A stretch of 64,000 bases of DNA from the NCBI GenBank assembly GCA_000388065.2, contig KB932202.1; one strand, given 5' to 3'. Positions 30,304 to 48,300 of this stretch are shown here, in pieces (the first letter of the stretch is position 1; the number at the start of each line of letters is the position of its first letter). Made by a program: the position numbers and the translations under genes. Under the pieces are notes generated by a model that worked only from the letters and a program-made list of their open reading frames with translations, was not told the origin of the DNA and did no database searches. The DNA is from Fonticula alba ATCC 38817 (lineage: Eukaryota; Protista; Nucleariida).

Positions 30304-30414
30304 GCTTTCCGTGGGGGTGGGAATATCGATCTATCTATGTGTCTTGCTGGGTGGGTGGGTGGGTGTCCCCAGACATGTGTGTGCACAGACGCGGGGGGGG
30401 GGGCAGGGACAGAG

Positions 30415-30474
30415 GCACGAGCACGAGCACGAGCACGAGCGCGAGCACGAGCACGAGCGCGAGCGCGAGCGGGA
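30415..30474. repeat. Hexanucleotide tandem repeat (GCACGA/GCGCGA) x10 upstream of PIG-C
   Basis: gcacga x4, gcgcga, gcacga x2, gcgcga x2, gcggga read directly. Confidence 0.9.
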
Positions 30475-30855
30475 GGAGGGGGGGTTCCGGTGGCCCAAGA
30501 CAGCGGCTCGGTGTCTCGGGCACAGAGAAGAGGGAACGAGAGGGTAGCAAGGGCTGGCGCGGGGGAGGGGGGGGGGGCGGGAGGACAGAAGGCGACGGTC
30601 AGTCAGGGCAGCGGGGGGGGAGGGGGATCTCGCGAACCGCCCCGCAGGAGCACGGGGGCGCACGATCAAAAAGGGACAACTCCTCCAAAATGTGCCGTGA
30701 GCGGGCCGTAGTGGATGATCATGTGCTATGGGCGGCTTTCGCGAGCGCCCAATTAATAAGGATGTGCTGCTTTGCCCACGATCGCTTGCCAGTGGCCGCT
30801 GTTTCTCGCTTCGGTCGTGGGGGGGGGGGGGGGGGGGGGGGAGGAATCTGGCGGG

Positions 30856-30863
30856 TATAAAAG
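30856..30863 (+). promoter_or_regulatory. Canonical TATA box (TATAAAAG) with an upstream CCAAT at 30749-30753
   Basis: Exact consensus match in otherwise very GC-rich DNA; the transcript it would drive is unknown. Confidence 0.35.
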
Positions 30864-31669
30864 GACCTGTATATCCGACGTGAGAGATCTCATGTCCCAG
30901 CAGGATATCCCAGCCACTTTCCGCCATACATAACCGCATCTCCGCTCCTCCTCACACACTTCCCACCCTCTCCTCTCCTTCCCTCCCTCCCTCCCTCCCT
31001 CCCTCCCTCCCTCTCTCTCTGTCTCTCGCTCCCGCACACGCGCGGGTCTACCCTTTCTCCGCCGCTCCTCTCCGGAAGTCCAGAAAGGTGATGTCTGTGC
31101 GCACCCTCTCGCCGAGGATGCGACCCGCGTCCCCCCTGCGTAGCCCCCGTCACGCACTCCGCTGCGGCATTCGCCGGTCAGCTCGCCACCGGCATCGGCC
31201 ACGCAGATCCCCCCTGCGCCAATTGCCCCTCAGGACGCTGCTCCTGCTCGTGCTGCGCCTCCTGGGACCGCCGCGGTCCCGGCAACAAGGGAAGCCCCCG
31301 GCCGCCACCAGAGCCCCGGGATGCTGCCCGTGCGCGAGATTGGCGAAAGGCCGGCGACTGCCGCCGCTCCGCCCGGTCTCCGAGAAAGTACCAACCCATG
31401 TGTCGCGCTCCTCGGGGGCCCCGCCGCGCCTCCGCTGGAAGCTGAAGGTCGCCATGAAAATGAGACAAAAATGAGGAATTCGCCAGAGGTGCCAACGCGA
31501 CAGTGGGAGCCCAAGGGGCGCATTTCTGGCGTTGCACCGTTGTCAAGGGCGTCCCTTGGCGCGGCCAGGGGGAGGGGGGGGGGGGCTTTTTTCCGCCTCT
31601 CGGGGGGGGGACCACTTTCTTGCTCCAGAGCCCCGCCATGCAGGGAGCTGGAGGCCCGTCTAAGGCTAG

Positions 31670-31709
<40 letters not shown>

Positions 31710-34110
31710 CGGGAAAGGCCAAGCGGTGAGCAGCCTCGCGGTGTGGGTCAAGAGTAGCCGGGCCCGCGGGAGAGCAAGTGGTGGGGCGGAGGGGTGGCCG
31801 TGACCATTCCGGACTGGCGACCGAGCCGGGGTCCGGCGGGACACGGCCTCCCGGCCAGGAGGGGCGGGAAATAGGGGCACCGTTTCCTCAGTCACACGGC
31901 CCTGCGGGCACCCGTGGGAGGGGGAAGCCTCGGTGAGCGCGCTTGCGAGCGTGTTTGTGTGGGTGTGGGTGCGAGTGCGCGGCTGCCCTGCGTGTGCACG
32001 TGTGTAGGCGTGGACGTGGGGGGCGCCCCGGGGCAGGCGGGCCGTTGTCTGTACGTGGGGGTGCACCCCTGCGGGTGTCCATGGGTGCGTGGCCGCCATG
32101 GTGTGCGCAAGTGCCCCGGTGGCCGGAGGTGTCGCAGGGGAGGTCGGGGGGGGGGGGGGCGGAGGGCGTGGGCTGGAATACAGGCGGCCTGGATACACCG
32201 GCCCCAACAAGGCCCCCCCTCTCTGGGCGGGGCGGGGGGGGGGGGGGCCGCGTGTGCACGGGCGTCTCTCGGTGACGGGCCTTTCTCGGAAGGAAACCCG
32301 GGCGGCAGGCTCGGTGAAACAAGCGAATTCGCTGATCGGGACGCCCCCCGCGGGGGCCCGACACCCGGGCGAACTCCCGGTCCGCCTACGGGGCTGAGCC
32401 AGCGCCCGGCGGAACCTTCTCGCGCGGGCTCCTCTCGGCGCAGGGTGGCAGCGCCGAGGAGGCGGGGGNNNNNNNNNNNNNNNNNNNNNNNNNNNNNNNN
32501 NNNNNNNNNNNNNNNNNNNNNNNNNNNNNNNNNNNNNNNNNNNNNNNNNNNNGGGGGGGGGGGGAGGGCCAAGGGAGCGGAACTTCTGGCGGCAGCCTGC
32601 AAAAAAAGGGGACACAAGCCGGCCGCCGGTGTTGCCTTGCATAAAGGAGCGGGCGCCTCGCTCGCGCGTCCACACACGGGCGTGCTGCCGGTGCGCCCCA
32701 TCGCCGCGGGAAGGGGCCGCGGGCGCGTGCGCCTGACAGGTGTCAACGGGGCGCCTGGACGCCGAGACGCCGCCCCTTCTCCTGGGTGGACGTGCTCGTT
32801 CTGCTCGCCGGGGGGGCGCGCAGGGGGGGGGGGGGAGGGGTGAACATCCCATCATCCGGGCGTTCCCCCTTGCAAGACCCAGGGGCGGTGTAGGGGGATG
32901 AGTGATCGAGGCCGCCCCTTGGCAATATAATGCTCGGCGGAATATAATAATGAGATTTGCCGACCGCCGGCTGTTCCCCTGCCTGCCTGCCTGCCTGCGG
33001 GCCCTCCCCGCCCGGGAGTCTGTTCCCGAGGGGGTGGCCGGGTGCACCGATGTCCGGCGAGCCCGGAACCCGGCAGCTGGCGCATTATTGTTTGTCCAAA
33101 CACTGGCCGGCCGGCGCGCACCTAACCGCGCCCCCGGGCGCACGGGGCCCGTGCGCCCTCCCGCAGCCCCCGTTCCCTTTTGTCCATGCTCCCCCCCCCC
33201 CCCCCCCCCCCCCTGGCCCCTGCCCTTGGGCCCCGCTTTGTCGCCGGCCGCCAGGGTGTCCAAACAAGGGTCGGAAACATCCCGCCCTCCGGCCTGCGGC
33301 AAGTGTCTGCCCGCCCTCCTGTCGGTGGTGGCCAAATGTGTGCCTCCTGCGGCCGTGGTGGCGGCCCCAGCGTGCGTCGCTTCTCGGCCCACCCCGCGAG
33401 GAGGGGGCAGGTCCGTGACCCGGCGCGCGCGCGCGGGCACATCGAGCGCGCCATACTCGCGGGGCTTGTGCGCACGTCCGGGCGCAGGATGGGGTGCGTC
33501 CGCGGCCGAAAGTGTGGGAACCGCCCCCCAGTCCAGGGGGCGGGGCCCGGGGAGGACGCAGCGGGAGGCCCACACGAAGGGGGCCCGGCAGGCGGGCGGG
33601 CGGGCAGGCAGGCGGGCAGGCAGGCAGGCAGGCAAGGGGGGAACGAGGGGTGCCGAACCCCTTGGTCAAGCCCGCGTGCCGAGGCGGTGAGCGCTCTCCT
33701 GGATACGGAGCGCCTGCCCCAGGCGTGCGCCGGCCCCTCGCGCCCCCCTCGCTCGGCCTGGCTCGCGGGCCAGGGACTCCTCGGCTGGCGTGGGCGGAGG
33801 GGACCCGGGCTGCGCGTGTGCCGCCCCCGGGCGGGCGTCTGCCCTCGGGGGCCTGCACACCGGCGCGTTTTCTCCTCCGGGGCGACCTCGCCATGTTTGT
33901 CCGGCCTTCGCCCCATGCCGCTCGCCCGGGGGCGGGGGCAGGGAGGGTGACCGTGTATCGCTGGCAACCGGGCCCAAGCAAATGCGAGCCCCGTTTGAGG
34001 GTGCCCTTTGCGGTGGCAGGGGCCCGAGCGATTTTGACGCGTCGTGCCCCCGGGTATGGGCGTGGTCTGTGTGGGGGGGCATCGGGGGAGGGGGCGAACA
34101 TGGGGCGGCC

Positions 34111-34193
34111 GTGTGCGCATGTGTGCGTATGTGTGTGTATGTGTGCGTATGTGTGTGTATGTGTGTGTATGTGTGTGTGTGTGTGTGTGCGTG
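34111..34193. repeat. 10-bp-period minisatellite (GTGTGYGYAT) x6 plus (GT)n; 83 bp of unbroken purine-pyrimidine alternation
   Basis: Read directly from the sequence. Confidence 0.9.
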
Positions 34194-36519
34194 AGTGTGC
34201 CAGTGCGGCGCGCCCGGTGCACGGCGCCCGAGGCCAGGCTCCGAGAGCGCCGGCCGATGGCCGCCCCTTCGGTAGCGCGCCCAGCACCCGGGGCCTGGGG
34301 CCTTTTGGTGAACAAGAGCCGGCCATCGAGCCATGGACGCCAAAGTGCGCGAGACTCCCCCCCCCCCCCACCGCTCCCAGCCCGGCCGGCCTCGGGTCTG
34401 CCTCGGCGGGGGCGGCCTGCCGGAGGCGCCCGGGCAGCTCCGGCCGGCTTGTGTGCGCCTCCTTGCGGCCGACGCCGGCTCCCTGTGTCACACCCACCGG
34501 TCCGGCCAGGGGGTGCTCCTGGATACCTGCGAGACATGCTCATGCCGGCCCGGACGGGGGCCTCCCCTTGAAACGTGCCTGCGCGCCTGGGGCCGTCGAC
34601 GACCAGGCAGCCGGTCCGGGGATGCGACAACTTTGCGCCGAAGGAGGGCCGAGGGAGGCGCCGGGCCGCGGAATCGGCCCGCCCGGACGGGCCCGCCACC
34701 AACCAGCAGCTCGGGACCCGGGCGGGGGGGAGCCCGCTTGCTTTTGCCTCGGGCCCGCATACCCCGCCATCGCCCGGACATGCCATTGCTATGTCCCCCA
34801 ACCGGCGAGAAGGGGCCAGGACAGCATGCTGACATCCGGCCAGAGGCCGGCCTCATTTTCTGGCCCTTCCCCCGGGGCCCGGAGTGTGGAGCCCGACCAC
34901 CGGAGCCAAGCCCGGAAGTGGGTGCCCGCCCCCCCCGCCCCGCCCCCCACCCCGGCAGCCGGCGCGAGGGCGACCCCGCCCGCCAGCGCGGGATTCCCCG
35001 GCCGGCCAGCGCTCGGCCGCCACCCACGCCCCGCAGCAGAGAGCAGCCCTACGCATATCTACGGGTTTGCCAATGGTAGAGGAATGCCTCGCCCCCCCCC
35101 CTCCCCCCGCCCCCGGCGAGGCTCCGCGCGTCTGCACGCGTCTGGGTGTGTCCTCTCTGCCTCTCGCTTGGCGTCCTGTCCAGATGCTGGGGCAATGCCC
35201 GCGCGCGCGCGCGCGCGAGAGGCTCCCTCCTCGCCTGGACGAACCAGGCCCGGCGGCCGCGCCAGCTGCCCCCGGCTGCGTGGCGGCCCCGGGCCCGGCG
35301 GCCGACCGCCCGTGCAGTGGCTCCTCCCAGATCCGCGGGTCGGGGGGAGGGGCCCGGGGGAGCGTGGTCCGGTATTGTTTGCGACCCCCCCTGGAGACGG
35401 GCTCCCACGCCAGGCCGAAGCCAGTGATCCTCCCTCTCTGCGCGTGGCCATGCTCTGCGCATGCACCCAGCAGGAGTCCCCCCCCCCCCCCCCCCCCCCG
35501 ATGCCCCAGCCGTCTCGGCCCGCGGCCCGGCTGGGGGCGCGCTTGCCCCGCCGCCGGGGCCGGGCGGAGATCTCCCAGCCTGCCGGGGGATTCCTTCCTG
35601 TGCCGCGCTCCGAGCGCGCGATCTCCATCCCCCCCCCCCCCCCCCCGCGGGCGCCATCTCGCGTGCCAGGTGCCAGGCAGTCGGCGCTGCGCCGCTGTAA
35701 CCGTGCCCGCGCCCGCGCCGGGGCATTCGCGGTCGTGGTTGCCCAGCGGCCGGGCTTGGCGCGGCCCCACTCCCAGCCAGCACGCGTACCCTCGCCAGGC
35801 GCGGCCCATCCGCACGCGAGGGGCTCCAGGGGCCGGCGAGGGGAAGGCGGCCTCGGGCAAAGACCGGCAGATACGCCCGGCGATGCCGACCGGAGCCGAT
35901 GTCGCTATGGGCCGAGAGATCACCCGGTTGCCTTGCCCTTGTGTGGCCGCGGGGGGAGGGAGGGAGGGAGGGAGGGGGGGGGGAGGCAGGCGCGGCATAC
36001 CATTCGGAGGGAGAGCCGGCTCTGGCAGGTGTCATCCTCGCGCCGCCTATGCGGCTGCTGCCGTGCTCTGGAGCACGCCCGCGGCTACCATCACCACCGA
36101 GCCTCTCACCTCGTCCGCCCACTTGCCCTCCCCCCCCCCTGGTTCCTCTCCGGGCCTGTGGAGCTTCCAGCCCGGAGGCACCGCACTCGCCTAGAAGACA
36201 TGCCGCCCTCCCCGGCATGGCGCTCGACCACGCCTGTACATCACCACCACCAATCTCACCCTCCCCCCCCCCTACTCCCTTCCTTTGCCGCCTTCCTGCC
36301 TTTGCTCCCTGCCCCCCCCCCCCTCCCCCAGTGCCAAGTACCCCTCGCGCACCCCCGCACCGCCCTCCCTCCATCTCCTCCCCGCCGCCCGCCCTCGTCG
36401 GAGCCGCCCCTCTTCCGCCGTGTTGCGAGCCCAGGTGCGCGCCCTCTGCTTCTTGCGAGGCATCTGCTCTCCTCTCAGCCGTTGTCTCACCCGATGGCCT
36501 GTCCGTGCCCTCCACGCGC

Positions 36520-36520
<1 letters not shown>

Positions 36521-36611
<91 letters not shown>

Positions 36612-36621
36612 NNNNNNNNNN

Positions 36622-36654
<33 letters not shown>
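36521..36654. repeat. Poly-C tract (about 91 C + 10 N + 33 C) just upstream of the pseudo-MAPK start
   Basis: Homopolymer interrupted by a 10-N gap, so the true length is unreliable. Confidence 0.7.
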
Positions 36655-36658
<4 letters not shown>

Positions 36659-36674
36659 CGGATAGTCCGCCGCC

Positions 36675-39600
36675 ATGCCCCAGAACGCACACAATAGCCG
36701 GATCTTTTCCCTGCCGGTCCCCAAGCAGGCATCCTTCAGCTCGTCGACCGAGAGCAGCCCCAGCCTGTCGGCGGACTTTGGCGGCTTCTGCAACTTCGGC
36801 GGCTCCAGCAAGGCCAGCGACCCGCCGCAGTTCACCGAGCTCTACACCCTGGACTATGCCCTCGGCCGTTCGCCCAGCGGCCGGGGCGATGTCTTGTGCG
36901 TCGCTCGGTGATCCCACCCACCCACCCACCCATGCGCACCAAAGCCGCCCACCGGGCCAAGCCCACTGACAACCAAATGGCCCCATGCAGCGTCGCCACC
37001 ACCATCGTCGATCGCGCGCCGGTGCACATCCGTCGACTGTCGCTCCTTGAAACCACGCCCAGTGGCCCGGGCCCGGTGTCGGCCAATGGCAAGCATGTTG
37101 CCAACCCGGCCAGCGGACTGGATGGCTCCCATCGCGTCACGGCCCCGGCTCCGGAGGAGGGCGCCGGCCCGTCCCCCGGGTCGCCGCCTACCGCCGGGCG
37201 TGTGGACAACTCCCCGACCGCGAGCATGGCTCGCCAGACCCTGACGAAGTTGACCGCCGGCAAGCTGCGCCCCTCCCGCAGCACGTCCCCCTCGTCTGGC
37301 TCCCGGGCCGCCATGGCCGCCGGCTGTGCCAACATGACCAGCACCTTCATGACGCAGTCCGCCGCCTATGAGCTGGCCATCCTGTCATCCACCAGCCACC
37401 CGAATGTGCGTGCTCCCTACCATTCCGCCCCCCCCCCCCCTCGCCTCACCTCCTCCCCTGCTTGAAGACTGGTCCGGGCCCCTTGCATCGTGCCCGCCTC
37501 TGACTGACTCTCAATTTCCTCCTGCCGCTGGCGGCGCCCCCCTCCCCCCATAGATCGCCGCCCTGCGTGATGTGTTTATTTCGCCCAGTTGCGATCTGTG
37601 CGTGCTTGGCTCCTTCGAATCGGGCAACCATGCTAAGGTCGCCGAGCCTCTCTGTCTCCCTGCCTCTCTCCCTCTCCCTCTCCCTCTCCCTCTCCCCCCC
37701 CCCCCCTCCCCAGCTCGTGCTGCTGATGCATACTCACCACCCGGCTCCCGGCCCCATTCACCTCACCCTCCTGTTCTCTCGGCCCATTGACCACGCGCGC
37801 TTCTCCCGCACAGCTACATTGTCACTGAGCTCTTGGACTCGTCGGCCTCCTCGCTGCTGGAGGCTGCCGCCTCTGGTGAGCTGTCCATGGCGTCGCTAAA
37901 CATCGGGGTTTTCGCCGCCGGTGGCCGTAAGAAGGCTGGCGAGCCGGCTCCCTCCATTCACTCGGTCTATGAGCGCACCGCGCAGGCCTACCTCCGGGGG
38001 GCCATCAGCGCGCTGGCTGTGCGTGCCTGCATCTCCCTGCGCGCTGTCTTCCTTCTTCCCTCGTGCCGCCTCCACACCCTGCCTTGTGCGCCCATTCCCA
38101 CTTTTGCCATGACATCCCAGCTGACCTTTCGCCCCCTGCCCACCTCCCGGCACTGGCCATCTCCATTGCAGCATCTCCACTCGGCCGGGGTCACCCATGG
38201 CTGTCTCACCACCGCCAGCCTGCATATGTGCTCCAAGACCGGTCGCGTCCTCGTGCGTGCCAGGATCTCATCGTGCAGCCCCCTCACCACCCCATGCTCG
38301 CCATTCTGCGCCTGTTCTTCTCATCGCACTATGCCTGACGGGGATCGCCCCGTCGCCCTCTTCACTTTGGCTGACACCTCCGCGCCTGGTCCTGCCCCCC
38401 CCCCCGCCCTTTGCAGCTTACCGACGCCGCATCGCTGCCGGCCACCAGTGGCGACTGCCCTCCTGGGCCGTATGCCGCTCCCGAGGCGGCGCTCTGCATG
38501 GGCGGTGCGCCGTCGAATGTCGCCGGGCAGCGCTTCGATCCCCACTCCTTTGAGAACCGCGCGGCGGCGGATTCCTGGTCGCTGGGTGTTGTGGCTGCGC
38601 AGTTGGCTCGCGGCCAGCACGAGCAGCTGACCGACAATTCGCTCACCTCGCGCGCCATCTCCTGGGCGCGCATCCTCGTGGGCACCTTTGGCCCATGCGA
38701 GGCTGAGTCCCCGGAGAAGGTGGCCGCCCCGCCAGACGCCAAGAACTGGGATGGCGTTCGTCAGGATGTGCGTGTGCTTGCGTTTGTGTTTCTCTCTCTC
38801 TCTCTCTCTCCCTCTCTCCCCCTCTTCCTCCTTCGCCTGGCCCCATGTCCGTCCTTTTGGACATGTGGACGGGCGTTGGTGTACCTCCCGAAGTGCGTGT
38901 CTGCATGCACGGAACTGACCATTGGGCTCTCTTTTTTTTTTCTTGCTTCCCCTCTGTCTCTCGACCTTGCCGTGCGGCTTCCGCTTGCCACGCGCTCTGT
39001 GTAGGTCCGTGATCTGCTTGAGAAGCCGCTGGCTCGCGCGTCGCGCACCCTGCGCGACCGGTACACCCGGTCATCGAGCATTGCCCCGGGTGCGGGTGGA
39101 TCCCTCCTGCCATCGGCCAGTTCCGCCCTGCACAACACCTCCGGCTCGGACTCGGCGTCCTTGCGTTCGGTCGGCTCGGTCAGCTCGGACTCGGCGTCCA
39201 TCGCCCCGAGCATCGCCGGGCTTGGCTCTTCTCTGCGCTGTGAAGAGGCGGCCGACATTGCCGGGCAGCTTCTCCGCCTGGCTCCCTCTCGCCGGATCCT
39301 CCCCTCCTTCCTGCTGACTTCGCCGCCGTCGTCTCTGGTGCGCATGCCATTGGCTCCTGCTCTTCCAATTGCCCCCTGCCCGAGCTCCTCCCTGTGCAAG
39401 TTCCCTCGTGTGATCACCATGGGGGACGATGGGCGGCGCGCATTTTCGCATGGGCGGCCCCCGTGTGCCCGACGACCGTCGACCAGCCAAATCGAACAGC
39501 AACTAACGCGGTATCATGGAACGATGGCCGGACTTTTCCTCCTCTCTCCCCCTCTCTCTCCCTCTCTCTTGCTCCCCCCCGCCCCCGCCGCCCTCCACAG

Positions 39601-39834
39601 CCCACCCCCATCGAGCTGCCCATTTTCCGTCCCACCACCTCCGGCATCCCGCACTCGGCCTCCCTCTCGTCCATCACTTCCAACGCGTCGACGAACTCCA
39701 AGTGCTCCCTCAGCGTGGGCTTCGACCTGCCTGAGGGGACATTCTCGCCGGAAGACCTGGCCGGGTTCGAGGCGATCGCGTGGATTGCCAAGTCGGTGAA
39801 TGAATTCCACCAGTCAAACGGTATTTACTTCTGA
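36675..39834 (+). CDS. p38/Hog1-type MAP-kinase-fold protein lacking catalytic residues (predicted pseudokinase), 627 aa, 8 exons
   Basis: Exons 36675-36895, 36991-37405, 37554-37597, 37814-38018, 38172-38252, 38417-38767, 39005-39337, 39601-39834 (1,884 nt, no internal stops). The spliced product has LGRSPSGRGDVFVAT, PVHIRRL, AAYELAIL, HPNIAALRDVFISPSCDLYIVTELLD, HLHSAGVTHGCL, LLTDAA, YAAPE, DSWSLGV, LLRLAPSRRI and AWIAKSVNEFHQ. These are collinear with Hog1 ([36 protein letters not shown]). ATG context is gccgccATG. Confidence 0.85.
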
Positions 39835-40139
39835 GCAGTCGGAGGCACGGCATCCACGACCACAGCAGCCGCATGTTCCTCTCTCTCTCTCTCTCTCTCC
39901 CTCTCGTCTGCCGCTCTGCGCTTCCGTTTTCCCATGCAGACGGGCCACCGGCCCGTCGAGCCTCTCCCTCTCTCGCTCGGAGTGCTGCTTTTTCCGCCCG
40001 CTGCCTGGCCGACTTGCCGGGCGACAAAGGGAGCGCTGGGGATGTCTTTGTTTCTGGTTGCTTTCAGTTTCTGCTTCCCGTCCGATGTACACCTCCTCGT
40101 CTCCCCAATTTTCGCCTGTTGGAGGATCGCCCCCCTCCC

Positions 40140-40178
<39 letters not shown>

Positions 40179-41589
40179 CATCCCCCATCGAAATGGGCGC
40201 AGCATCTCTCCCCCTCGCTCGCTCTCTCCCTCGCTCGGTGTCCTTTATGTGCGCGCCATGCGCACTTGGTATTCAAGGCATCGCGGGAGCACGCGCCCTC
40301 CCCGCCCCCCCCCCCTTCCCCCCCTCCCTCCCCCTTCTTCCGCTCCATCAACAGGTTTTTGCTTCCTCTGCTCGCCCGCGCACCGCCCGGCCGCAGCAGC
40401 GGGCCACATTTTGATCCACTTCCTCCCCAGGAGCGCGACTGTCACCGCAGGGTGACGGCCAATGCCTCGTCCGGAGGGCCCCGCCATGTGTGCATATGCA
40501 TGTGGGTGCGGGCGTGGGTGCACATATGTTCCCCCCCCCTCCCCCCACATCCCCGATGCATTCTCTGCCGGCTGCCTCGCCCTCCTCCTCTCTCCGCCTT
40601 TCCTTCGCCCCCCCCCCTCCCTCCCTACCCCCCAACCCCTCCTCTTCTTCACAGAAAGAGCGCGCACGCAGGCTGCATAAATGTGCTCTTCCTCCTCATT
40701 TTCGTGCCCATCTCTCGGCGTAGTCCTCGTCGAACCTCCGGCAAATAATAAAAACCCTAGACATCACAGTGTGCTGCGATCTTCGCCGCCATGTAGGCGC
40801 GATGCCGGCGACCGAGGCCCAGCGGTGTGCGTGTGCGTACCACCCCTCCAAGCTCACATCCCTCGAAGAAGGGGCGGGGGGAGCAAAGCACAAAGCAGCA
40901 CAGGGCCGCCCAGGTCGTGAGGAAAAAAAGGCCCCAGCAACGATCCAGGACGCGCTCGGCGGGTGGCGCTCCCGGCATGCAGGGGCGCGAGGCGAGGCGA
41001 GTCAAGAGAAAGGCAGACAAGCTAAGAAGAGGATAATGTATTGACATCTGACGGTGCCAGATCCCGATGCGCGTATGGGGGCATTTGACATGGGTCCATG
41101 TAAAAATACAAACATGGACACAGGCGGTGCCCGCATGTGTGGCGTCCATGAATGTGGCAAGAAGACATCTGTGTATGGGGAGCGATGCTCGAGGCAGGGC
41201 CGGTAGCCAGCTCGCGCATCGCCGGAATGTGGCTTCACCCTGCGCCGAGGCCCCGCGCACGCCCCCTCTCTGACAGCCGCACATTCGGGTGTACCCCCCC
41301 TCCCCCCCCCCACCTCCCGCTTCCCCCGCAGGGGGCGCGCAGGGGAGGCGCCGAGGGGCAGAGGAGGGAAGACAAAGAGCATGCTCGCGGGGCAGGGAAG
41401 GAACTGTTTCCCTGCAAGGCATGAGGCCTGGGCGGGGGGAAGGGTGGGAGAAAGGGGGGCAGGGGAAAATTGCAAGGAAAGGCAAAAAGGAGAGCATCTG
41501 CATGGGCGAAGGAGGGCGGCGAGGGGCCGAGCGAGGGGAGAGTGTGGGTATCTCTCTCCCGCGGAGCCGGCGGCGGATGGAGAGAGGTG

Positions 41590-41860
41590 TCAAGTTCGCC
41601 GCAGGGACCCATATGAGGGGCCACCCCCGGGGACCGGTGGAGGGGGCTCCGCCGTCGCGGTGTCGGACGGCGGGGCGGCAGCACCACCATAGGGGCCGCC
41701 CACAAAGTCCGCCGAAGCCGTCAAGTGCAGGGGGACTGCCTACTGTCGCCGTAGGTGGACAACAAGGGGAGGAGAGCAGCAAGTCAAGTTAGCGACGGGG
41801 GCGGGAAGTTAAAAGAGGACTCGGCCTCGAGGGGGGGGGGGTGCCTCTGCACCAGCCTGA

Positions 41861-41898
<38 letters not shown>

Positions 41899-44800
41899 GG
41901 GGGGGAAAACGGGGCGAGACACACGGTACTTACCTGAGAATGATCCAGCCAGGGCCCGCCACCGCGCCCGGCGTCCTCAGCCTGGGGGAAGCTATCGAGC
42001 GAGAGCACGCGCGACCCGCCATGCTGGTATGGTGCCGACTGATGGTGGTGGTGGTGGTGGTGGTGCTGCTGCTGCTGCTGCTGTTGCAGGGGGTACTGCT
42101 GGTATGGCGAGTAGTACTGAGTCTGCTGCTGCTGCTGCTGCGACATCTGGTACGACGACGCCGACTGGTGGGAATGGTAGGCCGCCGCCTGGGGGTGCGG
42201 CAGCGATTGCGAATGGTACGACTCGATCTTCGGGCCGGCCATGCCCCCACCATGCATCATGGCATAGGGCAGGGACACGCGCGGGATGATTTCCGATTCG
42301 TCGACCAGGCGCGTGAACCCCTCGTCAGCCAGAAGGCTGCCCGAGGGGAGGGTCCAACCAACAGCTGGCGCCTCGGCCGCAAGCACATGGCTGCCGGCCA
42401 TGTCAGGCCCGCCGCGAGTGCCGGAGTGCTGTGGTTGTTGCGGTTGCTGCTGCTGTTGCTGCTGCTGCTGCAGCGGCTGCGAAGAGTGGAAGGACCCGGG
42501 GGGAGCGCCGGCGGTGGCGGCCGCGGCCGCCCAAGCAGGCCCGGGAGACTCGGCACGCGAGTCGGTGGCCGCGTGCGGGAGGCTGCCGGCTGCCGGGCCG
42601 GCGCCAGCCCCATTGGCAATGGCGAAGTTGGCCACCGCCAGGGCGCTATTGGCCGACATGTGGAGATTGTCCACCGACCGACTGCCGGGGGAATTGGGCA
42701 TGGACTTGGAGGAGAGGGTGGTCAGGGAGGAAGAGGAGAAGGACGTCGGCAGGTGGCCGATGGAGCCGGAGAGAATGTGTGGCCGGAAGCCGGACATCGG
42801 GCCAGGGCCCGGGCCGACCGGGGTCGACACGCTGGTGGACGACAGCAGGATGGACTGGCCGACACCGTCGGCCGCGCCGACCGGGGTCGAGATTGCCTCC
42901 ACGTCGTTGCTTCCGCCACGCGGGCGCTTCAGCGATTGGGGGGGAATGGTCACGGACGCCGACCCCGGGGCGGCCGCCGGGAGCACATCACCGGAGTAGG
43001 GGCCGCCTGGCGAGGGCGAGGGAGCGGCAGTGCTGGCCCCGGTGGCTCCGCCGGAAACGGCTCCTGACTGCCGGTGCGGGCCGAGAGCCGACCCGGCGGC
43101 CGGGATGTGCCCGCCAGTGCGAATGCCTGTACCAGCAGCACCGCCGCCGGGCGGGACGATGGCCAGGTCGCGCGGCGCCAGGCGCGAGTCCGAGAATGAC
43201 CGGACCATGCCGGCACCATCATACTCGAATCCCGCCAGGGACACGGGGGTGCCACTGCCGCCGTTGGTAGTGGTGGTGGTGGTGGTGGTGCTGCTGCTGC
43301 CGCCGGCAGCTGTCGAGGAAGCCGGCGGCGGGCTGGTCACCACATGGGGGAAGTGCAGCGGGCCACAGCTCCGCCGGAGTTTGTTCGGCTGTGGCGACAA
43401 AGGCGCCGCGCCGGCAGCATTGCCACCTGCCATGGGCCCGGGGCTGGGCGGCGACAGGGCCGACAAGGAGGCCTTGCCAACCAGGTGCCCGGCCGAGGCC
43501 GAGTGTGTCATGCCCTGATGCCCGTGCGGGCCGCCGCCGCCGCCGCCACCGCCGGGCCCGCCAACGCCCGCCTCGACCGTTAGGTGGGACAGGTGCGGGG
43601 GGTGCTGCTGTTGCTGCTGCTGCGAGTGGTGCACCAGGGGCTGGAGATGCGGGTGGAGATGCGGGTGATGATGAAGAGCGCGCGTCGCGGCGACCGCATT
43701 GTCGCCAGCTCGCCAGGGGGCCTCGCCGGGACCGCCCCCGGGGCCGGCCGCATGGGGAGACTGCTCCTGCACCGGGGTATTGGTGCCGGAAATGGGCGTC
43801 ACCTGGGCCATACTGCCGGCGGGGTTGGTGCCTCCGGCGCTGGTCGCCCCGCCCCCCGGCGAGGTGGGCAGGACCACCACCTTCGGATAGAGGGCCGCCG
43901 CCACCGAGGACGGATGTGGCAGGTTGGGCGAGCTCATGGACGAGATCATGCCCCGGCCAGAGCCGCTGCTTGGCGGGCCAGCCGCGACATTGGTCGCCGA
44001 CTCGGCGCCCGGATCCGGGTGGTGTTGAGACAGGTACTCGATGGAGCCGGTGTCCGGAACCGGGCCCGGCCCGAGGGCCGAGGCGCCACCGGCATCCGGC
44101 ACCTCGGCCACGGCCCGGGCTCCGAAGAGGTCTGTGCGTCGGGCGGGACCGAGGAGCCCCGCTCCCAGGCCGGCATCCAGGTCCTGACCATGGTACGAGG
44201 CTGCCGAGCGCAGGGTAACCTCCGGCCCGGCAGTCGACGAGTTGGCCGGCTGCGCAGCATCAGGCTGCAACGGGCTGATGACCATCTGCGCATGGTGGTT
44301 GCTGCCACCGGCATGCTGCTGCTGCTGCTGCTGCGAATGGAGTGGCGTGTGCAGGTGCGGATGCGAGTGGGGATGGTTCGCGTGCGGATGCGGCTGGTAC
44401 TGTGGGGCATATTGTGCCTGCGAGGAATACTGCTGCGACTGCGGCTGCTGCTGCTGCGAGGAGAACGGCGACTGCTGGCTGGCATACTGCGAGAAGCCGC
44501 CGGGAACCGCCGCCATGGCCCCGGGGGGCGGGGAAAAGTGCGGCAGGCTGAAGTCCCCATGCAGGGGCACGGATTTCACGGCCCCCGGAGGCAGCACATT
44601 GGCCGGGCTGCCGCGCAGGTCGCCGGTGCTCCCGAGAAGACCTCCAGGCAAGCCGGCCGTCGGGGAGGCCGAGTCGAAGGTGCCGCTGGTCGAGGGCGGC
44701 ATGCCGCCGCCACTGGCCAGGGAATCAGGGCGCCCGTGGGCCGGATGGAGGTGATGGTGCTGCGACGGGGGGTGATGGCCCTGATGCTGGTACTGGTATG

Positions 44801-45361
44801 GGTGATGCTGGCCGGCTCCCAATGGCAGGGACCCGGCACTGGCGGAGTGCCGCATGAGCGGCCGCCGGCCGGTGGCCTTAGCCGCCAATATGGCCCCCGG
44901 CTGGAAGTCATACTTCCCGGGGCCCATTCCGACCGGGCTGGGGGCGGCCCCGGCCGGGGTGGTCCCCATGCCATACTCGCTGCCGGCCCCGGTGGCCATG
45001 GATGGCAGGTCCCCGGCCGAGGGGGTGATGGCACGGCGAAGGCCAAAGCCCGTCGGGCCGCCGACCGGCGATGCGGCCATTGCCCGGCCGACGGCCGGCG
45101 GCGCATGATGCTCGTATGGACCGCCGGCCGTCCGGGCGGCCCCGGGCCCGGCGGCCGAGAAGCCCACCGTCGGCGAATGGCTGATAGTCAGTCGCGAGGG
45201 GTCCGACACCCCGAGCGGGCCAATCTCCAGGATGGGCGTGAAGGACATCTTCCCGGGGGGCCCGGCCGCCAGGGAGGCGGTGCCCTGCATGTAGTGCATG
45301 CCGGAGGGGGGATTTTGCGACTGGTGCGACGGATGGGCCTGGTGCGGGTGGCCGAAGGCCT

Positions 45362-45393
<32 letters not shown>

Positions 45394-48300
45394 TGGCCCA
45401 GGCCCATGCCCGAGGGGAAGTGGTGATGCGACATCGGGCCGCCGACCGCGTGCTGGGGCTGCGATTGTGACGGATGGCCCCCGGCACCGGGGGGGAACAT
45501 GCCCATCGGCGAGCGGGCCAGCGCACCGGGGGCCTGATGTGCGTGCTGCTGCTGTTGCTGCTGCTGCAGACGCATGGTCTGCAAGTCGAAGGCGGCATAC
45601 TCGCCGCCGGGAACCACCGGCATTCCAACCATCCCGGTGGCCAGGGCCTCGGCACCGAGGAATTGCATCTGCCCGACGCGCCCCAGGCCGGACATCCCCC
45701 CGAGATCCATGAGCCCCATGGTGCCGGGGAGGAGACCGGCCGCGCCGGGGCCCACCCCGACACCGGACACCACACTGGGCATGGTGGCAGTAAGGCTGGC
45801 CGTGACCGAGATATTGTGAGCGCGCTGCCGATGGCTGCGCAGGGAATCATCCCGCCGGTATGTCCGATGGCAGATGTTGCACTGGTATGCCCGGTACCGG
45901 TGATGCTTCGGCAGGTGGACCTTCAGATTGTAGGTCTTGCCCGGGGCATTGACATAGTTGCAGCCGCGCCACTGGGCATGGAGGGAGGAGGGGGGGGGGG
46001 GGGAAACACAAGGTGAGTCATGGAGCCGAACATTCGCCAAGCCGCGGGAGCACAAGGACAAGGAGGAGGGCGAAGAGGGCGGCCCCACATCAGCAGGCCG
46101 AGGAAGCGCAGGGCACCAGTGCGCCCTTGGCGCGCGGGCCACATACCTGGCACTGTTTCTCCGGCTTGTGCACATCATGCAGATGCTCCATCAGCTCGCG
46201 CGCGGAGAGGAACTCATCCCGGCAGTCGCCCCACTTGCACTGGAAGACATTGGATTGCTCGGAGGAAGGGGTCCCAGTGGCGTCGGAATCCTCCTTCATG
46301 TCGTCATCCTGCCCGGGATCCGAGCCGGGAGAGGGGGGCTCGGAGGAGTCCCCCGGGGACTTGCTCGAAGCGCCGGAGACGCCATTCCCAGCGGTGACGC
46401 CGGTCGACCCGGCAGCCGGGGGGCCAGCGGAGCTGGCACTCGCGCCGGCCGCCGGAAGCGACACCTTGCACCGGGTGTCGATGGTGGGCCGGTCCTTGGC
46501 CGAGCGCATGGACTCGCGACCGGCGGCCGGGGGATTGCCGGGGGCGCTGTCCCCGCGGCCCGGAGCCGGGCCAGGCGCTCCCGGCGCGGTGACCGGAGGC
46601 ACGCCATCGGCCGCGGGGGCGCCACTGGTGGGTGCCTGATGCCGGGTGGCGGCAGCCCCCTCGGGGGGCATGCGCTCCACCACGGGGCTGGAATACATGG
46701 CAAAGGAGGAGCAGGCATTGGAGGGCGATGCGGGGGCCGCTGTGCTGGTGGTGCCCGGCGCGGGCGATCCCCCCACCGGGGCCCCGGCCCCAGGGGGCGA
46801 CGTGGGAGACAGGGCAGCCAGCTGGGGCTGGGGGCCGGGCCGGGCCGAGGGCGACCCGGCGCCGCCGCCGCCGCCGCCACTACTGCTACCACCACCACCA
46901 CCACCACCACCACCACCACCACCACCACCACCACTGGAGCTGGTCAGTGGCGATACCGGGCACGAGCGCGAGCTGGCTGACCCGGACACCAGGAGCCCCG
47001 GGCCGGAGTGAATCATCCGGCCCGAGGACAAATCGGCTGCCGGGGACTTGGGCGAGAAGAAGCCGGAGTCCGAGTTCAGCGGGTTGGTCGACGTGAGCAG
47101 CGCATCGGGCGACACCGGCAACGAGCCGCCGGTCAGGGTGCCACCGGGGCCGCCATTGATGGCGGCGGCGCTGGCGGCGCCCGGCTGCTGCTGGCCATGG
47201 TGGCCATGGTGCGCATGCGGCGCGTGATGGTGCTGCCCGGCCGGGGGTCCATGACCATGCATCGGATGGTACAGGTGTCCGGGAGCCGGGGGTGGACCGG
47301 CCGAGCCGGGACCCATGGCGGAGAAGTAGCTCTGCGAGGCGAGCGACCCCCGGCGGCTGGTGGTCGGCGAGACGCCGGTAGAGCAGGCGTCCGATGACGA
47401 GGGAACCGGCGTGTACAGGCTGAGAGAGCTGTCGGAGGAGATGGACGGTGTGAGGGACCCACTGGAGGAGTGCAGCGATGAGGGGCCCAGGCTGTTGGGG
47501 GTGATGTCCAGATGCGGCCGCCCGGCGACCACCATTCCGGGCAGGTCGCTCGATGGCCGGCGCGTGGTGTGCTGGTGACCGCCTCCACCGTTACCGGAGG
47601 CCGGCTCCGGCGGCGAGAGCATCTTGGCGTCGTCGCGGAATTTGCCAGCTTCACCGGAAGGGGGATGCACTTCACGAGGAGCCCCGCCGGCAGAAGGCGA
47701 TGACAGTGGCCCGGGAGACTGGCCGCCGGGGTGGGGGTAGTGGTGTTGGAGTGGCGCCTGATAGTACGGCGCCGAGGAGGCCGGGTGTGCTTGGTGCCCG
47801 GCGGAGCCCCCGGCCGGGGATGCGTGATAGTGCTGCCCCGGGGCAGGGGCATCCCCGTGGAGGTGGTGCCGGTGCTGCTGCTGCGGCATATGCTGCGACG
47901 ATGGCGGTGGCGCCGGCGGCGGATGGGGGTGTGGGGCCTGGTGCTGCTGCTGCTGCTGCTGCTGCGGATGCGGATGCGGATGCGAGGAGTGGCCCGGGTA
48001 ATGGGCATGGTGATGATGGCCCGGGGCCTCATGCAAGGGGCTCATGGCTACCTGCGGCGTGGCCGGTGACCCGCCGACCCCCGGGTCGAAGAGGGCCCCT
48101 CCGTCCGAGAAGAAGTGCTGGGGTGGATAGGCGGTGAAGAGGGAGTCCGACCGACCACCGACACCAGGATCATGCACCGCGGCCCCGGGGTCCGAGAGGA
48201 AAGAGCCAGGCCCGGAGCCGACGAGCTGCTGCTCGTTCATCCTCTGGGGCAGGGGAAGAGGCCTGGGTGTCGGGAGGAGCAGGGAGAGGATGGTGGGGCG

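What the first reader, a model, noticed from the sequence alone, without database searches (positions are those of the whole stretch)
36675..39834. Intact but catalytically dead p38/Hog1-type MAP kinase (pseudo-MAPK)
Seen: the ORF track only shows fragments, but splicing eight exons gives a 627-aa kinase fold with no stops or frameshifts. Its catalytic motifs are degraded. The Gly-loop reads GRSPSGRG; VAIK becomes VHIR (Lys to Arg, 37031-37033); HRDLKPSN becomes HGCLTTAS (catalytic Asp to Cys and Asn to Ser, 38196 onward); DFG becomes DAA (38423-38431); and the activation segment has no TxY motif. Structural elements are kept: alphaC Glu (YELAIL), APE, DxWSxG, the subdomain XI Arg and the MAPK L16 helix (AWIAKSVNEFHQ). 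The acidic CD docking patch (DPTDEP in Hog1) is reduced to TPIELP. Known: these residues are required for phosphotransfer and MAP2K activation, and pseudokinases are uncommon among stress MAPKs. Inference: this is a retained, non-catalytic paralogue that may act as a scaffold, decoy or dominant-negative regulator of the osmotic/stress MAPK pathway.
Basis: partly seen in the sequence, partly recalled or inferred. Interest (0 to 1): 0.8.

Follow-up and report, generated by a model that had tools for sequence, protein, structure and literature searches.

The report
Expressed, catalytically dead MAPK-derived pseudokinase
A slime-mould-like amoeba (Fonticula alba) transcribes and correctly splices a gene that descends from a MAP kinase but has lost nearly every residue needed for catalysis, so it is a lineage-specific pseudokinase of a kind already known from yeast.

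Summary
RNA contigs from four runs confirm all seven coding introns. The product is the 627-aa protein annotated in Fonticula alba as "serine/threonine protein kinase". The motif readings and their coordinates are right: SPSGRG, VHIR, HGCLTTAS, DAA, no TxY.

Sequence alone shows only a very diverged kinase fold. Pfam Pkinase scores 32.5 bits against a cut-off of 31.7. hhalign gives E 1e-12 to a MAPK profile and 1e-11 to a CDK profile. Identity to every group is about 21%, and no homologue appears among 5.8 billion proteins.

MAPK descent rests on introns. Five of the seven lie at the same codon and phase as introns of p38 and ERK genes, and two of those are also in plant and fungal MAPK genes. 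CDK genes share none. The ESM Atlas model also matches MAPK clusters best.

The p38/Hog1 subtype is not shown. The L16 helix is not detectable by sequence. The acidic docking patches are gone, which argues against a canonical decoy role.

A neutral-drift simulation shows the open frame must have been kept by selection.

The precedent is yeast Mlp1/Kdx1. This is a new member of a known kind, of moderate interest. The same stretch was noted earlier in this scan (s1-066806).

The parts
36354..36434 (+). 5'UTR exon. The start is approximate (at least 81 nt seen). It contains no ATG.
   Evidence: contig X1 carries 79 further letters before 36664, and their last 30 letters equal window 36403-36432. 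The sequence was read.
36435..36665 (+). 5'UTR intron (GTGCGC..AG). It holds the poly-C tract of more than 100 bases and the 10-N assembly gap.
   Evidence: The junction is ambiguous by the dinucleotide AG and was resolved by the GT..AG rule.
36675..36895 (+). Coding exon 1 (the exon itself starts at 36666). It encodes Met1 to the second base of codon 74, with a disordered N-terminus and the degenerate Gly-loop S66-P-S-G-R-G71-D-V73.
36991..37405 (+). Coding exon 2. It encodes beta3 V-H-I-R88 (Lys to Arg), a Ser/Pro/Ala-rich insert of about 95 residues (residues 92-190), and alphaC with E201 retained. It ends at H-P-N212.
   Evidence: The spacing from V73 to R88 is 15 residues, as from V to K in p38 and ERK.
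37554..37597 (+). Coding exon 3 (44 nt), encoding beta4. It is the counterpart of the 59-nt p38 exon and the 56-nt ERK exon, with the same phases at both ends.
37814..38018 (+). Coding exon 4. It encodes beta5 LYIVTELL, alphaD, an insert of about 35 residues (241-279), and alphaE.
38172..38252 (+). Coding exon 5. It encodes HLHSAGVT-H304-G-C306-L-T308-T-A-S311, a dead catalytic loop (HRDLKPSN to HGCLTTAS), and beta7-beta8.
38417..38767 (+). Coding exon 6. It encodes L-T-D325-A-A (DFG to DAA) and a short activation segment without TxY. S333-G-D335 sits where T-G-Y would be when the segment is anchored on APE. It also encodes APE, a 16-residue insert, DSWSLG and LVGTFGP.
39005..39337 (+). Coding exon 7. 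It encodes the MAPK-insert region with a Ser-rich insert (462-514), alphaH AADIAGQLLRLAPSRRI (subdomain XI Arg) and alphaI.
39601..39834 (+). Coding exon 8 with the stop codon. PTPIELP sits in place of the acidic CD patch. It is followed by a Ser-rich linker, VGFDLPEG, and a C-terminal helix 600-621 that is the putative L16.
   Evidence: The helix was predicted. The L16 assignment is not significant by sequence. MAPK structure matches reach residues 619-624.
39835..40127 (+). 3'UTR (about 293 nt).
   Evidence: contigs of X1, X2 and X4 end at 40127.

Best explanation
This is a Fonticula-specific descendant of a MAP kinase gene that has become a pseudokinase. It keeps the bilobal kinase scaffold: the alphaC Glu, the HPN-beta4/beta5 core, the alphaE LHSAG motif, the DFG Asp, APE, DxWSxG and the subdomain XI Arg. 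It has lost two of the three Gly-loop glycines, the beta3 Lys (now Arg), the catalytic Asp (Cys), the catalytic-loop Lys (Thr) and Asn (Ser), the DFG Phe-Gly and the TxY phospho-acceptors. It has gained four or five long Ser/Pro/Ala-rich loops. It therefore most likely cannot bind ATP-Mg productively or transfer phosphate, and it cannot be switched on by a MAP2K in the usual way. The gene is transcribed, all eight of its introns are removed precisely, and its reading frame has been kept by selection through very large sequence divergence. It therefore most likely works through binding, as a non-catalytic adaptor or substrate-like module. Its disordered loops carry 12 S/T-P sites and could be targets of proline-directed kinases. 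Shown: the gene model, expression, the motif states, MAPK ancestry and the constraint on the frame. Inferred: no catalysis, no nucleotide binding and action by protein binding. Unknown: the partners.
For: Gene and expression: spliced RNA contigs in four runs have word depth 13-17 and intron depth of about 0. The product is identical to the annotated protein P0001.

Kinase fold: Pfam Pkinase gives E 7e-8 and 32.5 bits. hhalign to a MAPK profile gives 97.7% and E 1.4e-12 over residues 195-389. The Atlas own-sequence model has pTM 0.60.

MAPK ancestry: an exact exon mapper was applied to real genes.
- G-x-V[phase 2], H-x-N[0], [2]x-Y-[LI]-V and [0][IL]-x-D are shared with animal p38 and ERK1/2 genes.
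- The first two are also in plant-type MPK genes, and the first is in a fungal-type ERK gene.
- LK[0]YIHSAG is shared with fish p38.
- I2, I3 and I4 are the best or second-best gap-free sequence placements on their own.
- CDK genes share none. The nearest is HQNIV[2]R, which differs in place and phase.
- The Atlas structure search gives the highest TM (0.45, 321-324 residues, reaching residues 619-624) to three MAPK clusters, against 0.38-0.43 for other kinases.

Constraint:
- There are no stops in 627 codons, while the other frames have 4-15.
- GC3 is 0.82 against 0.645 in the gene's own introns.
- In simulation, neutral substitutions that give only 20% amino-acid change leave a stop-free frame in 4% of runs, and in 0 of 200 runs at 40% or more. 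The real protein is about 78% diverged from every MAPK.

Dead site: the motif states are anchored by HMMER and hhalign alignments and by the intron register.
Against: No orthologue exists in any searched collection. dN/dS and residue conservation therefore cannot be measured, and a recent loss of function cannot be excluded. A MAPK-only HMM scores lower (16.6 bits) than generic Pkinase. hhalign scores to the MAPK and CDK profiles are nearly equal. The tree is uninformative. MAPK descent thus rests on introns and one predicted structure. The beta1-beta3 region and the C-terminus are not aligned by any statistical method. AlphaFold2 without an alignment failed (pLDDT 34). The CDK controls came from metagenomic, mostly green-lineage contigs and not from an opisthokont. 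The inactivity is inferred, and some pseudokinases keep atypical activity.
Confidence: 0.72

Rival explanations
1. The protein is a p38/Hog1-type paralogue that acts as a decoy, scaffold or dominant-negative in the osmotic/stress MAPK cascade by holding the MAP2K or partners of the canonical stress MAPK.
For: HSAG and VTELL are Hog1/p38-like strings. The intron LK[0]YIHSAG was found only in fish p38 among the genes mapped. S-G-D sits where T-G-Y would be. F. alba is reported to have a canonical Hog1/p38-JNK orthologue, with TEY, that it could act on (10.1101/2024.10.01.616093). Yeast Mlp1 shows that a pseudo-MAPK can work inside its parent pathway (PMC9106771).
Against: There is no subfamily signal in identity (21.3% to p38 against 21.7% to ERK) or in the tree. 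Four of the five firm introns are equally ERK-like. The ED site NEDCELK reads SKTGRVL, and the CD patch has a single acidic residue. The alphaD-alphaE groove carries a roughly 35-residue insert. There is no TxY for a MAP2K to act on. No interaction data exist.
Confidence: 0.15
2. The gene is a transcribed relic that has recently lost its function and is drifting. The mRNA is made and spliced, but the protein does nothing.
For: It is an orphan with no detectable orthologue or paralogue. Its sequence is extremely diverged and more than half is low-complexity (S+T+P+A+G 0.52). The Pfam score barely passes.
Against: The frame is intact, although 96% of neutral runs acquire a stop at only 20% divergence. 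All splice sites are intact and used. Third-position A is 3% and GC3 is 0.82, against 11% and 0.645 in the introns. Structural kinase motifs are kept while catalytic ones are lost. Every visible insertion is in frame.
Confidence: 0.1
3. The protein is not MAPK-derived. It is a diverged kinase-like protein of another group (CDK-like or CAMK-like), and its intron matches with MAPK genes are coincidence or reflect generic ePK or CMGC introns.
For: The best PDB sequence hits are CIPK24 and CaMK1D, with MAPK, CDK and PAK close behind. hhalign scores a CDK profile almost as well as a MAPK profile. A MAPK HMM scores only 16.6 bits. The HR[0]DLKP intron of p38 is also seen in a plant-type CDK gene, so some introns cross families.
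Against: There are five position-and-phase matches. Three are anchored by sequence alone. With about 900 position-phase slots and about 18 MAPK sites, chance gives about 1e-7, and still under 1e-2 if each site is made ten times likelier (my own estimate). None of the seven P0001 sites is found in the CDK genes examined. The structural search favours MAPKs.
Confidence: 0.06
4. The protein is an atypical but active kinase that uses non-canonical residues, as WNK, CASK or haspin do.
For: The DFG Asp, the alphaC Glu and an Arg at the beta3 position remain. Several proteins first called pseudokinases turned out to be active (PMC9403797).
Against: The beta3 Lys, the catalytic base, the catalytic-loop Lys and Asn, two Gly-loop glycines and the DFG Gly are all lost together. 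No compensating Lys or Asp is evident nearby.
Confidence: 0.03

Closest known systems
Mlp1/Kdx1 of Saccharomyces cerevisiae, the pseudokinase paralogue of the MAPK Slt2/Mpk1
   Same: Both are MAPK-derived proteins that lack residues critical for catalysis and the activation-loop Thr. Mlp1 is expressed and acts without catalysis: it binds Swi4/Swi6 and the phosphatase Msg5 (PMC9106771; PMC3234975).
   Different: Mlp1 is a recent, easily recognised paralogue. It keeps the activation-loop Tyr, is still phosphorylated by Mkk1/2 and binds Slt2 partners. The Fonticula protein has no TxY residue left, is about 21% identical to any MAPK, has lost the acidic docking patches, carries long disordered inserts, and has no identifiable parent paralogue. 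It arose independently.
Canonical MAPKs (p38/Hog1, JNK, ERK1/2)
   Same: Five intron positions and phases are shared. The order of kinase subdomains is the same. HSAG and Y-I-V-T-E-L strings are present. The length and helical nature of the C-terminal tail resemble MAPKs. The best ESM Atlas structural matches are MAPK clusters.
   Different: There is no TxY, no catalytic Lys, Asp or Asn, and no acidic CD/ED docking site. No MAPK-specific sequence signal exists. It is 627 aa long against about 360 aa because of inserts.
Atypical MAPKs (ERK3/4 with SEG, NLK, ERK7)
   Same: These are MAPK-family members with altered activation-loop motifs and no canonical MAP2K (10.1101/2024.10.01.616093).
   Different: They keep a complete catalytic machinery and are active kinases. 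This protein does not.
Scaffold-type pseudokinases in general (STRAD, Tribbles, KSR)
   Same: The kinase fold is retained as a binding platform after catalytic motifs were lost. This is the mode of action proposed here (reviews PMC3014569 and PMC8141879, listed).
   Different: They belong to other kinase groups, have conserved orthologues and known partners, and several still bind ATP.

Membership tests
Eukaryotic protein kinase fold (Pfam PF00069) | Significant match to the Pkinase profile | tested here: met
   32.5 bits against a gathering score of 31.7, E 7.4e-8, residues 195-397 only. hhalign gives 97.7% and E 1.4e-12 to a MAPK profile. Single exons give no hit.
MAPK family | T-x-Y dual phosphorylation motif in the activation loop | tested here: not met
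   The segment D325-AASLPATSGDCPPGPYA-APE has no T-x-Y. S333-G-D335 lies at the equivalent place when anchored on APE.
MAPK family | Complete catalytic residues (beta3 Lys, HRD Asp, catalytic-loop Lys/Asn, DFG) | tested here: not met
   R88, H-G-C306, T308, S311 and D-A-A. Alignments are, coordinates.
MAPK family | Descent from a MAPK gene, shown by shared intron positions and phases | tested here: met
   Five of seven introns lie at the same codon and phase as in Nasonia, damselfly and fish p38, in Clytia and Mnemiopsis ERK1/2, and in plant-type and fungal-type MAPK genes. CDK genes share none. The sixth intron (RQD|VRD against SE.|ARNY) is only collinear and is not anchored.
MAPK family | Scores better with a MAPK-specific profile than with a generic or CDK profile | tested here: not met
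   The MAPK HMM gives 16.6 bits against 32.5 for Pkinase. The hhalign score is 97.6 for MAPK against 89.6 for CDK. Identity is 21.3-21.8% to MAPK groups against 20.6% to CDK-like kinases.
MAPK family | C-terminal L16 extension that packs on the N-lobe | tested here: inconclusive
   An HMM of the MAPK C-terminus scores -1.9, and 1204 of 2000 shuffles do as well. No PDB MAPK hit was found. However, a helix at 600-621 is predicted, and Atlas MAPK matches align up to residues 619-624.
MAPK family | Acidic common-docking (CD) and ED patches | tested here: not met
   The CD equivalent PTPIELP has one acidic residue. The ED equivalent is SKTGRVL for NEDCELK.
MAPK family | Placement inside the MAPK clade in a tree | tested here: inconclusive
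   The end branch is 10 changes per site, which is saturated. No starred clade holds the protein. It is separated only from two CDKs used as the root.
p38/Hog1 subfamily | TGY motif and closest sequence or tree affinity to p38/Hog1 | tested here: not met
   There is no TGY. Identity to p38 is 21.3% against 21.7% to ERK. The tree is unresolved. The only subfamily-leaning facts are HSAG and the LK[0]YIHSAG intron seen in fish p38 but not in two ERK1/2 genes. Hog1, JNK, ERK5, ERK7 and NLK genes could not be fetched.
Pseudokinase (operational definition) | Kinase fold lacking at least one of the beta3 Lys, HRD Asp and DFG Asp | tested here: met
   Two of the three are missing (K to R88, D to C306), and the DFG Asp is kept. 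Lack of activity itself is not testable with these tools.
Decaying pseudogene | Stops or frameshifts, loss of splicing, or loss of expression | tested here: not met
   The frame of 627 codons is open, all introns are spliced, and mRNA is present in four runs. The simulation argues against long neutral drift.

The most novel reading that the evidence does not exclude
The protein could be a MAPK-fold adaptor locked in one conformation. With S-G-D in place of T-G-Y (an acidic residue at the phospho-Tyr position) and no need for a MAP2K, it could present a permanently 'activated-like' or 'inactive-like' surface. It could also use its phosphorylatable Ser/Pro loops to tune the single Hog1-type pathway of Fonticula, for instance during aggregation and fruiting. 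That would be an independently evolved pseudo-MAPK regulator, more radical than yeast Mlp1.
Probability: 0.1. Interest if true: 0.6.

Novelty: new member of a known kind. Interest (0 to 1): 0.36.

Why it matters
Pseudokinases derived from MAPKs are rare. The only studied case I could find is yeast Mlp1/Kdx1. A second, independent and far more eroded example in a deep-branching relative of fungi would show that the MAPK fold can be kept for non-catalytic work after losing the active site, the TxY switch and the classical docking patches. It also gives a worked example of method: the protein sequence can no longer tell MAPK from CDK, yet conserved intron positions still identify the parent family. 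The public annotation ("serine/threonine protein kinase") should read pseudokinase. Because the gene is an orphan in a non-model organism and has no functional data, the finding is of moderate interest and not a surprise for the field.

Tried and rejected
- My first splice model used the donor at 36908 and gave 631 aa. RNA contigs rejected it.
- Pfam and PDB searches with single exons gave nothing usable.
- Homologue searches found only the protein itself. These used exon 6 against 1.8 billion representatives, the whole protein and residues 195-440 against 5.8 billion proteins. One bacterial PknA/B-like chance hit, P0003, also appeared. Orthologue-based tests (dN/dS, conservation mapping) were therefore impossible.
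- AlphaFold2 without an alignment failed once and then gave pLDDT 34, which is unusable. No fold search was run.
- I ran no further search on an alignment of MAPKs, because such a model would be circular for the membership question.
- A PDB search with the C-terminus and a MAPK C-terminal HMM against shuffles gave no support for L16.
- A MAPK HMM, hhalign against MAPK and CDK profiles, percent identities and an ML tree could not tell subfamily, or even MAPK from CDK.
- The look-up of the Tigriopus p38 gene found no record.
- Locus L102, a p38 gene fragment, is intron-poor and did not help for intron 4.
- Hog1, JNK, ERK5, ERK7 and NLK genes, and Fonticula's own MAPK genes, could not be reached.
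- No D-motif or FxF motif is present in the protein.
Full report
**1. What is there**

The window has 66.9% GC. The ORF list shows only fragments between 36675 and 39834, among many spurious long ORFs typical of GC-rich DNA. Joining eight segments at GT..AG sites gives one open frame.

Four RNA runs from 2012, covering two samples, hold about half of the sampled words of the stretch. Their assembled contigs of 1.8-2.3 kb lie on the stretch as eight blocks with GT..AG joints. Depth is about 13-17 on exons and about 0 in introns. The contigs corrected one junction of my model: the intron-1 donor is at 36896, not 36908.

The contigs also show an untranslated first exon that ends at 36434. A 231-nt 5'UTR intron follows (36435-36665) and contains the long poly-C run and the N gap. 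The ATG at 36675 is the first ATG in the assembled transcript. The 3'UTR ends near 40127. All eight donors begin with GTGCG.

A search with exon 6 against 1.8 billion representative proteins returned one real hit, P0001. It is 627 aa and 100% identical. It equals the transcript-based product letter for letter and is named "serine/threonine protein kinase [Fonticula alba]".

**2. How much of a kinase is it by sequence**

Single exons match nothing. The whole protein just passes Pfam Pkinase, with 32.5 bits against a cut-off of 31.7 and E 7.4e-8, and only over residues 195-397.

Against solved structures the best hits are weak and mixed: CIPK24, CaMK1D, SNRK, CDK1/2, MAPKs, PAK1 and ULK1. These alignments do fix the register. 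HGCLTTAS lies on HRDLKPxN, and LTD325AA lies on the DFG strand.

No homologue exists at E of 0.1 or less (whole protein) or 10 or less (residues 195-440) among 5.8 billion proteins. The single extra hit is a bacterial PknA/B-like kinase matched by chance.

To get reference sequences I scanned metagenome contigs for a DNA pattern encoding WYRAPE-12 residues-DIWSxGC. I extracted 24 full-length MAPKs and some CDKs from the hits. With one copepod p38 as seed I then fetched named p38 proteins, and I fetched ERK1/2 and plant MPKs by cluster look-up. The comparisons gave:

| Comparison | Result |
|---|---|
| MAPK-only HMM | 16.6 bits |
| hhalign to MAPK profile | 97.7%, E 1.4e-12 |
| hhalign to CDK profile | 97.4%, E 9.8e-12 |
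| Identity to p38 / ERK / plant MPK / CDK-like | 21.3 / 21.7 / 21.8 / 20.6% |
| ML tree | branch saturated at 10 changes per site, unresolved |
| C-terminus against MAPK L16 HMM | no better than shuffles |

Sequence alone says "very diverged ePK, probably CMGC-like" and nothing more.

**3. Why I still call it MAPK-derived**

I wrote an exact protein-to-genome exon mapper, and it reproduced the RNA-confirmed structure of this gene. I applied it to Nasonia p38, damselfly p38 and a fish MAPK11/MAPK12 tandem, and to Clytia and Mnemiopsis ERK1/2. I also refined junctions in plant-type and fungal-type MAPK contigs.

| P0001 intron | Context [phase] | Same place and phase in |
|---|---|---|
| I1 | GDV[2]F | G-x-V[2]C in every MAPK gene examined except the intron-poor L102 fragment: animal p38 and ERK, plant-type, fungal-type |
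| I2 | HPN[0]I | HEN[0]V in animal p38 and ERK and in plant-type MPK (lost in the damselfly gene) |
| I3 | CD[2]LYIV | [2]xY[LI]V in animal p38 and ERK |
| I4 | ALA[0]HLHSAG | GLK[0]YIHSAG in fish p38 only |
| I5 | RVL[0]LTD | ELK[0]ILD in fish p38 and both ERK genes |
| I6 | RQD[0]VRD | collinear with SE.[0]ARNY and of the same phase, but not anchored |
| I7 | SSL[0]PTP | no p38 counterpart; lies near the ERK DE[0]P intron in a region that cannot be aligned |

I2, I3 and I4 are the best or second-best gap-free placements by BLOSUM62 alone. I1 is anchored by G-x-V and by the identical 15-residue spacing to the beta3 position. I5 is anchored by the DFG Asp. For I6, an alternative alignment (DAKNW on EARNY) shifts the site by nine residues.

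As a control I examined CDK genes on metagenome contigs. They have introns elsewhere. The nearest is HQNIV[2]R, which differs in both place and phase.

With about 900 position-phase slots and about 18 MAPK intron sites, five matches out of seven have a chance probability near 1e-7. This estimate is my own.

Independently, the ESM Atlas holds a model of this exact protein, made without an alignment (pTM 0.60). Its best structural neighbours by TM are three MAPK clusters, with TM 0.45 and 321-324 aligned residues running to residues 619-624. Other kinases reach 0.38-0.43.

**4. Subfamily**

The p38/Hog1 label is not established. Four of the five firm introns are shared with ERK1/2. Only I4, together with the strings HSAG and VTELL, leans towards p38/Hog1. 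I could not fetch Hog1, JNK, ERK5, ERK7 or NLK genes, nor Fonticula's own MAPK genes. A preprint reports that F. alba has a canonical p38/JNK (Hog1) orthologue that keeps TEY (10.1101/2024.10.01.616093). This protein is therefore an extra copy and not the organism's stress MAPK.

**5. Dead or alive, used or decaying**

Read in the intron-anchored register, the motif states are:
- Gly-loop SPSGRG, with only the third Gly kept.
- Beta3 R88 in place of Lys.
- AlphaC E201 kept.
- H-G-C306 for HRD, T308 for Lys and S311 for Asn.
- D325-A-A for DFG.
- An activation segment four residues shorter than in p38, without TxY.
- APE, DSWSLG and the subdomain XI Arg kept.

By established knowledge of kinase catalysis, losing the base, the beta3 Lys, the Mg-binding Asn and the Gly-loop together abolishes phosphotransfer. 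This is an inference and was not measured.

The gene is not drifting. The other five frames of the mRNA have 4-15 stops while the coding frame has none. GC3 is 0.82, against 0.645 in the gene's own introns. In a neutral substitution simulation, 96% of runs acquire a stop by the time only 20% of residues have changed, and all 200 runs do at 40% or more. The real protein differs from every MAPK at about 78% of aligned sites, and all of its insertions are in frame.

**6. How it probably works**

I propose a binding-only MAPK-fold module. The canonical docking apparatus looks dismantled:
- The ED site NEDCELK reads SKTGRVL.
- The CD patch reads PTPIELP.
- About 35 residues are inserted in the alphaD-alphaE groove.

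The protein carries no D-motif or FxF motif of its own, but it has 12 S/T-P sites, about half of them in the disordered inserts and tails. That speaks against a simple MAP2K decoy. It favours either a novel interface or a role as a phosphorylated adaptor. The known precedent is yeast Mlp1/Kdx1, a pseudokinase paralogue of Slt2. Mlp1 activates Swi4/Swi6 by binding and shares the phosphatase Msg5 with Slt2 (PMC9106771; PMC3234975). Mlp1, however, keeps the activation-loop Tyr and MAP2K control, which this protein has lost.

**7. Context**

The neighbouring genes are a TSC2-like gene, PIG-C, and a 2093-aa gene without Pfam domains on the other strand. Nothing suggests an operon-like or functional link.

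**8. Verdict**

It is a new member of a known kind, of moderate interest.

Noticed in passing
window 36520-36655: A poly-C tract of well over 100 bases, interrupted by a 10-N assembly gap, lies inside the 5'UTR intron of this gene. Its true length is unknown.
   Followed up: partly
window 36435, 36896, 37406, 37598, 38019, 38253, 38768, 39338: All eight splice donors of the gene begin with GTGCG, and four read GTGCGTGC. This is a much tighter 5' splice-site consensus than the usual GTRAGT, and it may be a Fonticula-wide feature.
   Followed up: no
window 37655-37721, 38764-38838, 39538-39598, 39880-39905, 40140-40185: (CT)n and (CCCT)n microsatellites fill the polypyrimidine parts of introns 3, 6 and 7 and the region beyond the 3'UTR. 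The reads tool skipped them as repeats.
   Followed up: no
window 30304-36350 and ORF 33494-36697: About 6 kb upstream has no called gene but carries a 1067-aa stop-free ORF rich in P, G, R and A. It is probably a GC-composition artefact, but I did not check it with RNA.
   Followed up: no
window 41590-48240 (- strand): The downstream neighbour encodes a 2093-aa protein with no Pfam family on record.
   Followed up: no
window 40273-40406 and 40541-40654: RNA contigs of depth 26-29 touch these short CT-rich stretches with loose ends on both sides and a non-canonical CT..TT 'joint'. These are probably low-complexity cross-matches from other loci and not transcripts of this place.
   Followed up: no
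L121 (fish Triplophysa tibetana, protein P0055): The annotated 519-aa 'MAPK11' is a chimera of two tandem p38 genes (MAPK11-like exons followed by MAPK12-like exons). Each half is incomplete. This is an annotation error in the public record, but it was useful here because together the halves show all vertebrate p38 introns.
   Followed up: partly
L027 (plant-type CDK contig): The p38 intron HR[0]DLKP, which the Fonticula gene lacks, also appears at what looks like the same place in a plant-type CDK gene. At least one kinase intron site is therefore shared across CMGC families or was gained in parallel.
   Followed up: no
P0003 (Logan contig, 404 aa): This bacterial PknA/B-like kinase carries H-G-G-L-K-P in place of HRDLKP, so it looks like a bacterial pseudokinase. 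It surfaced only as a chance match.
   Followed up: no
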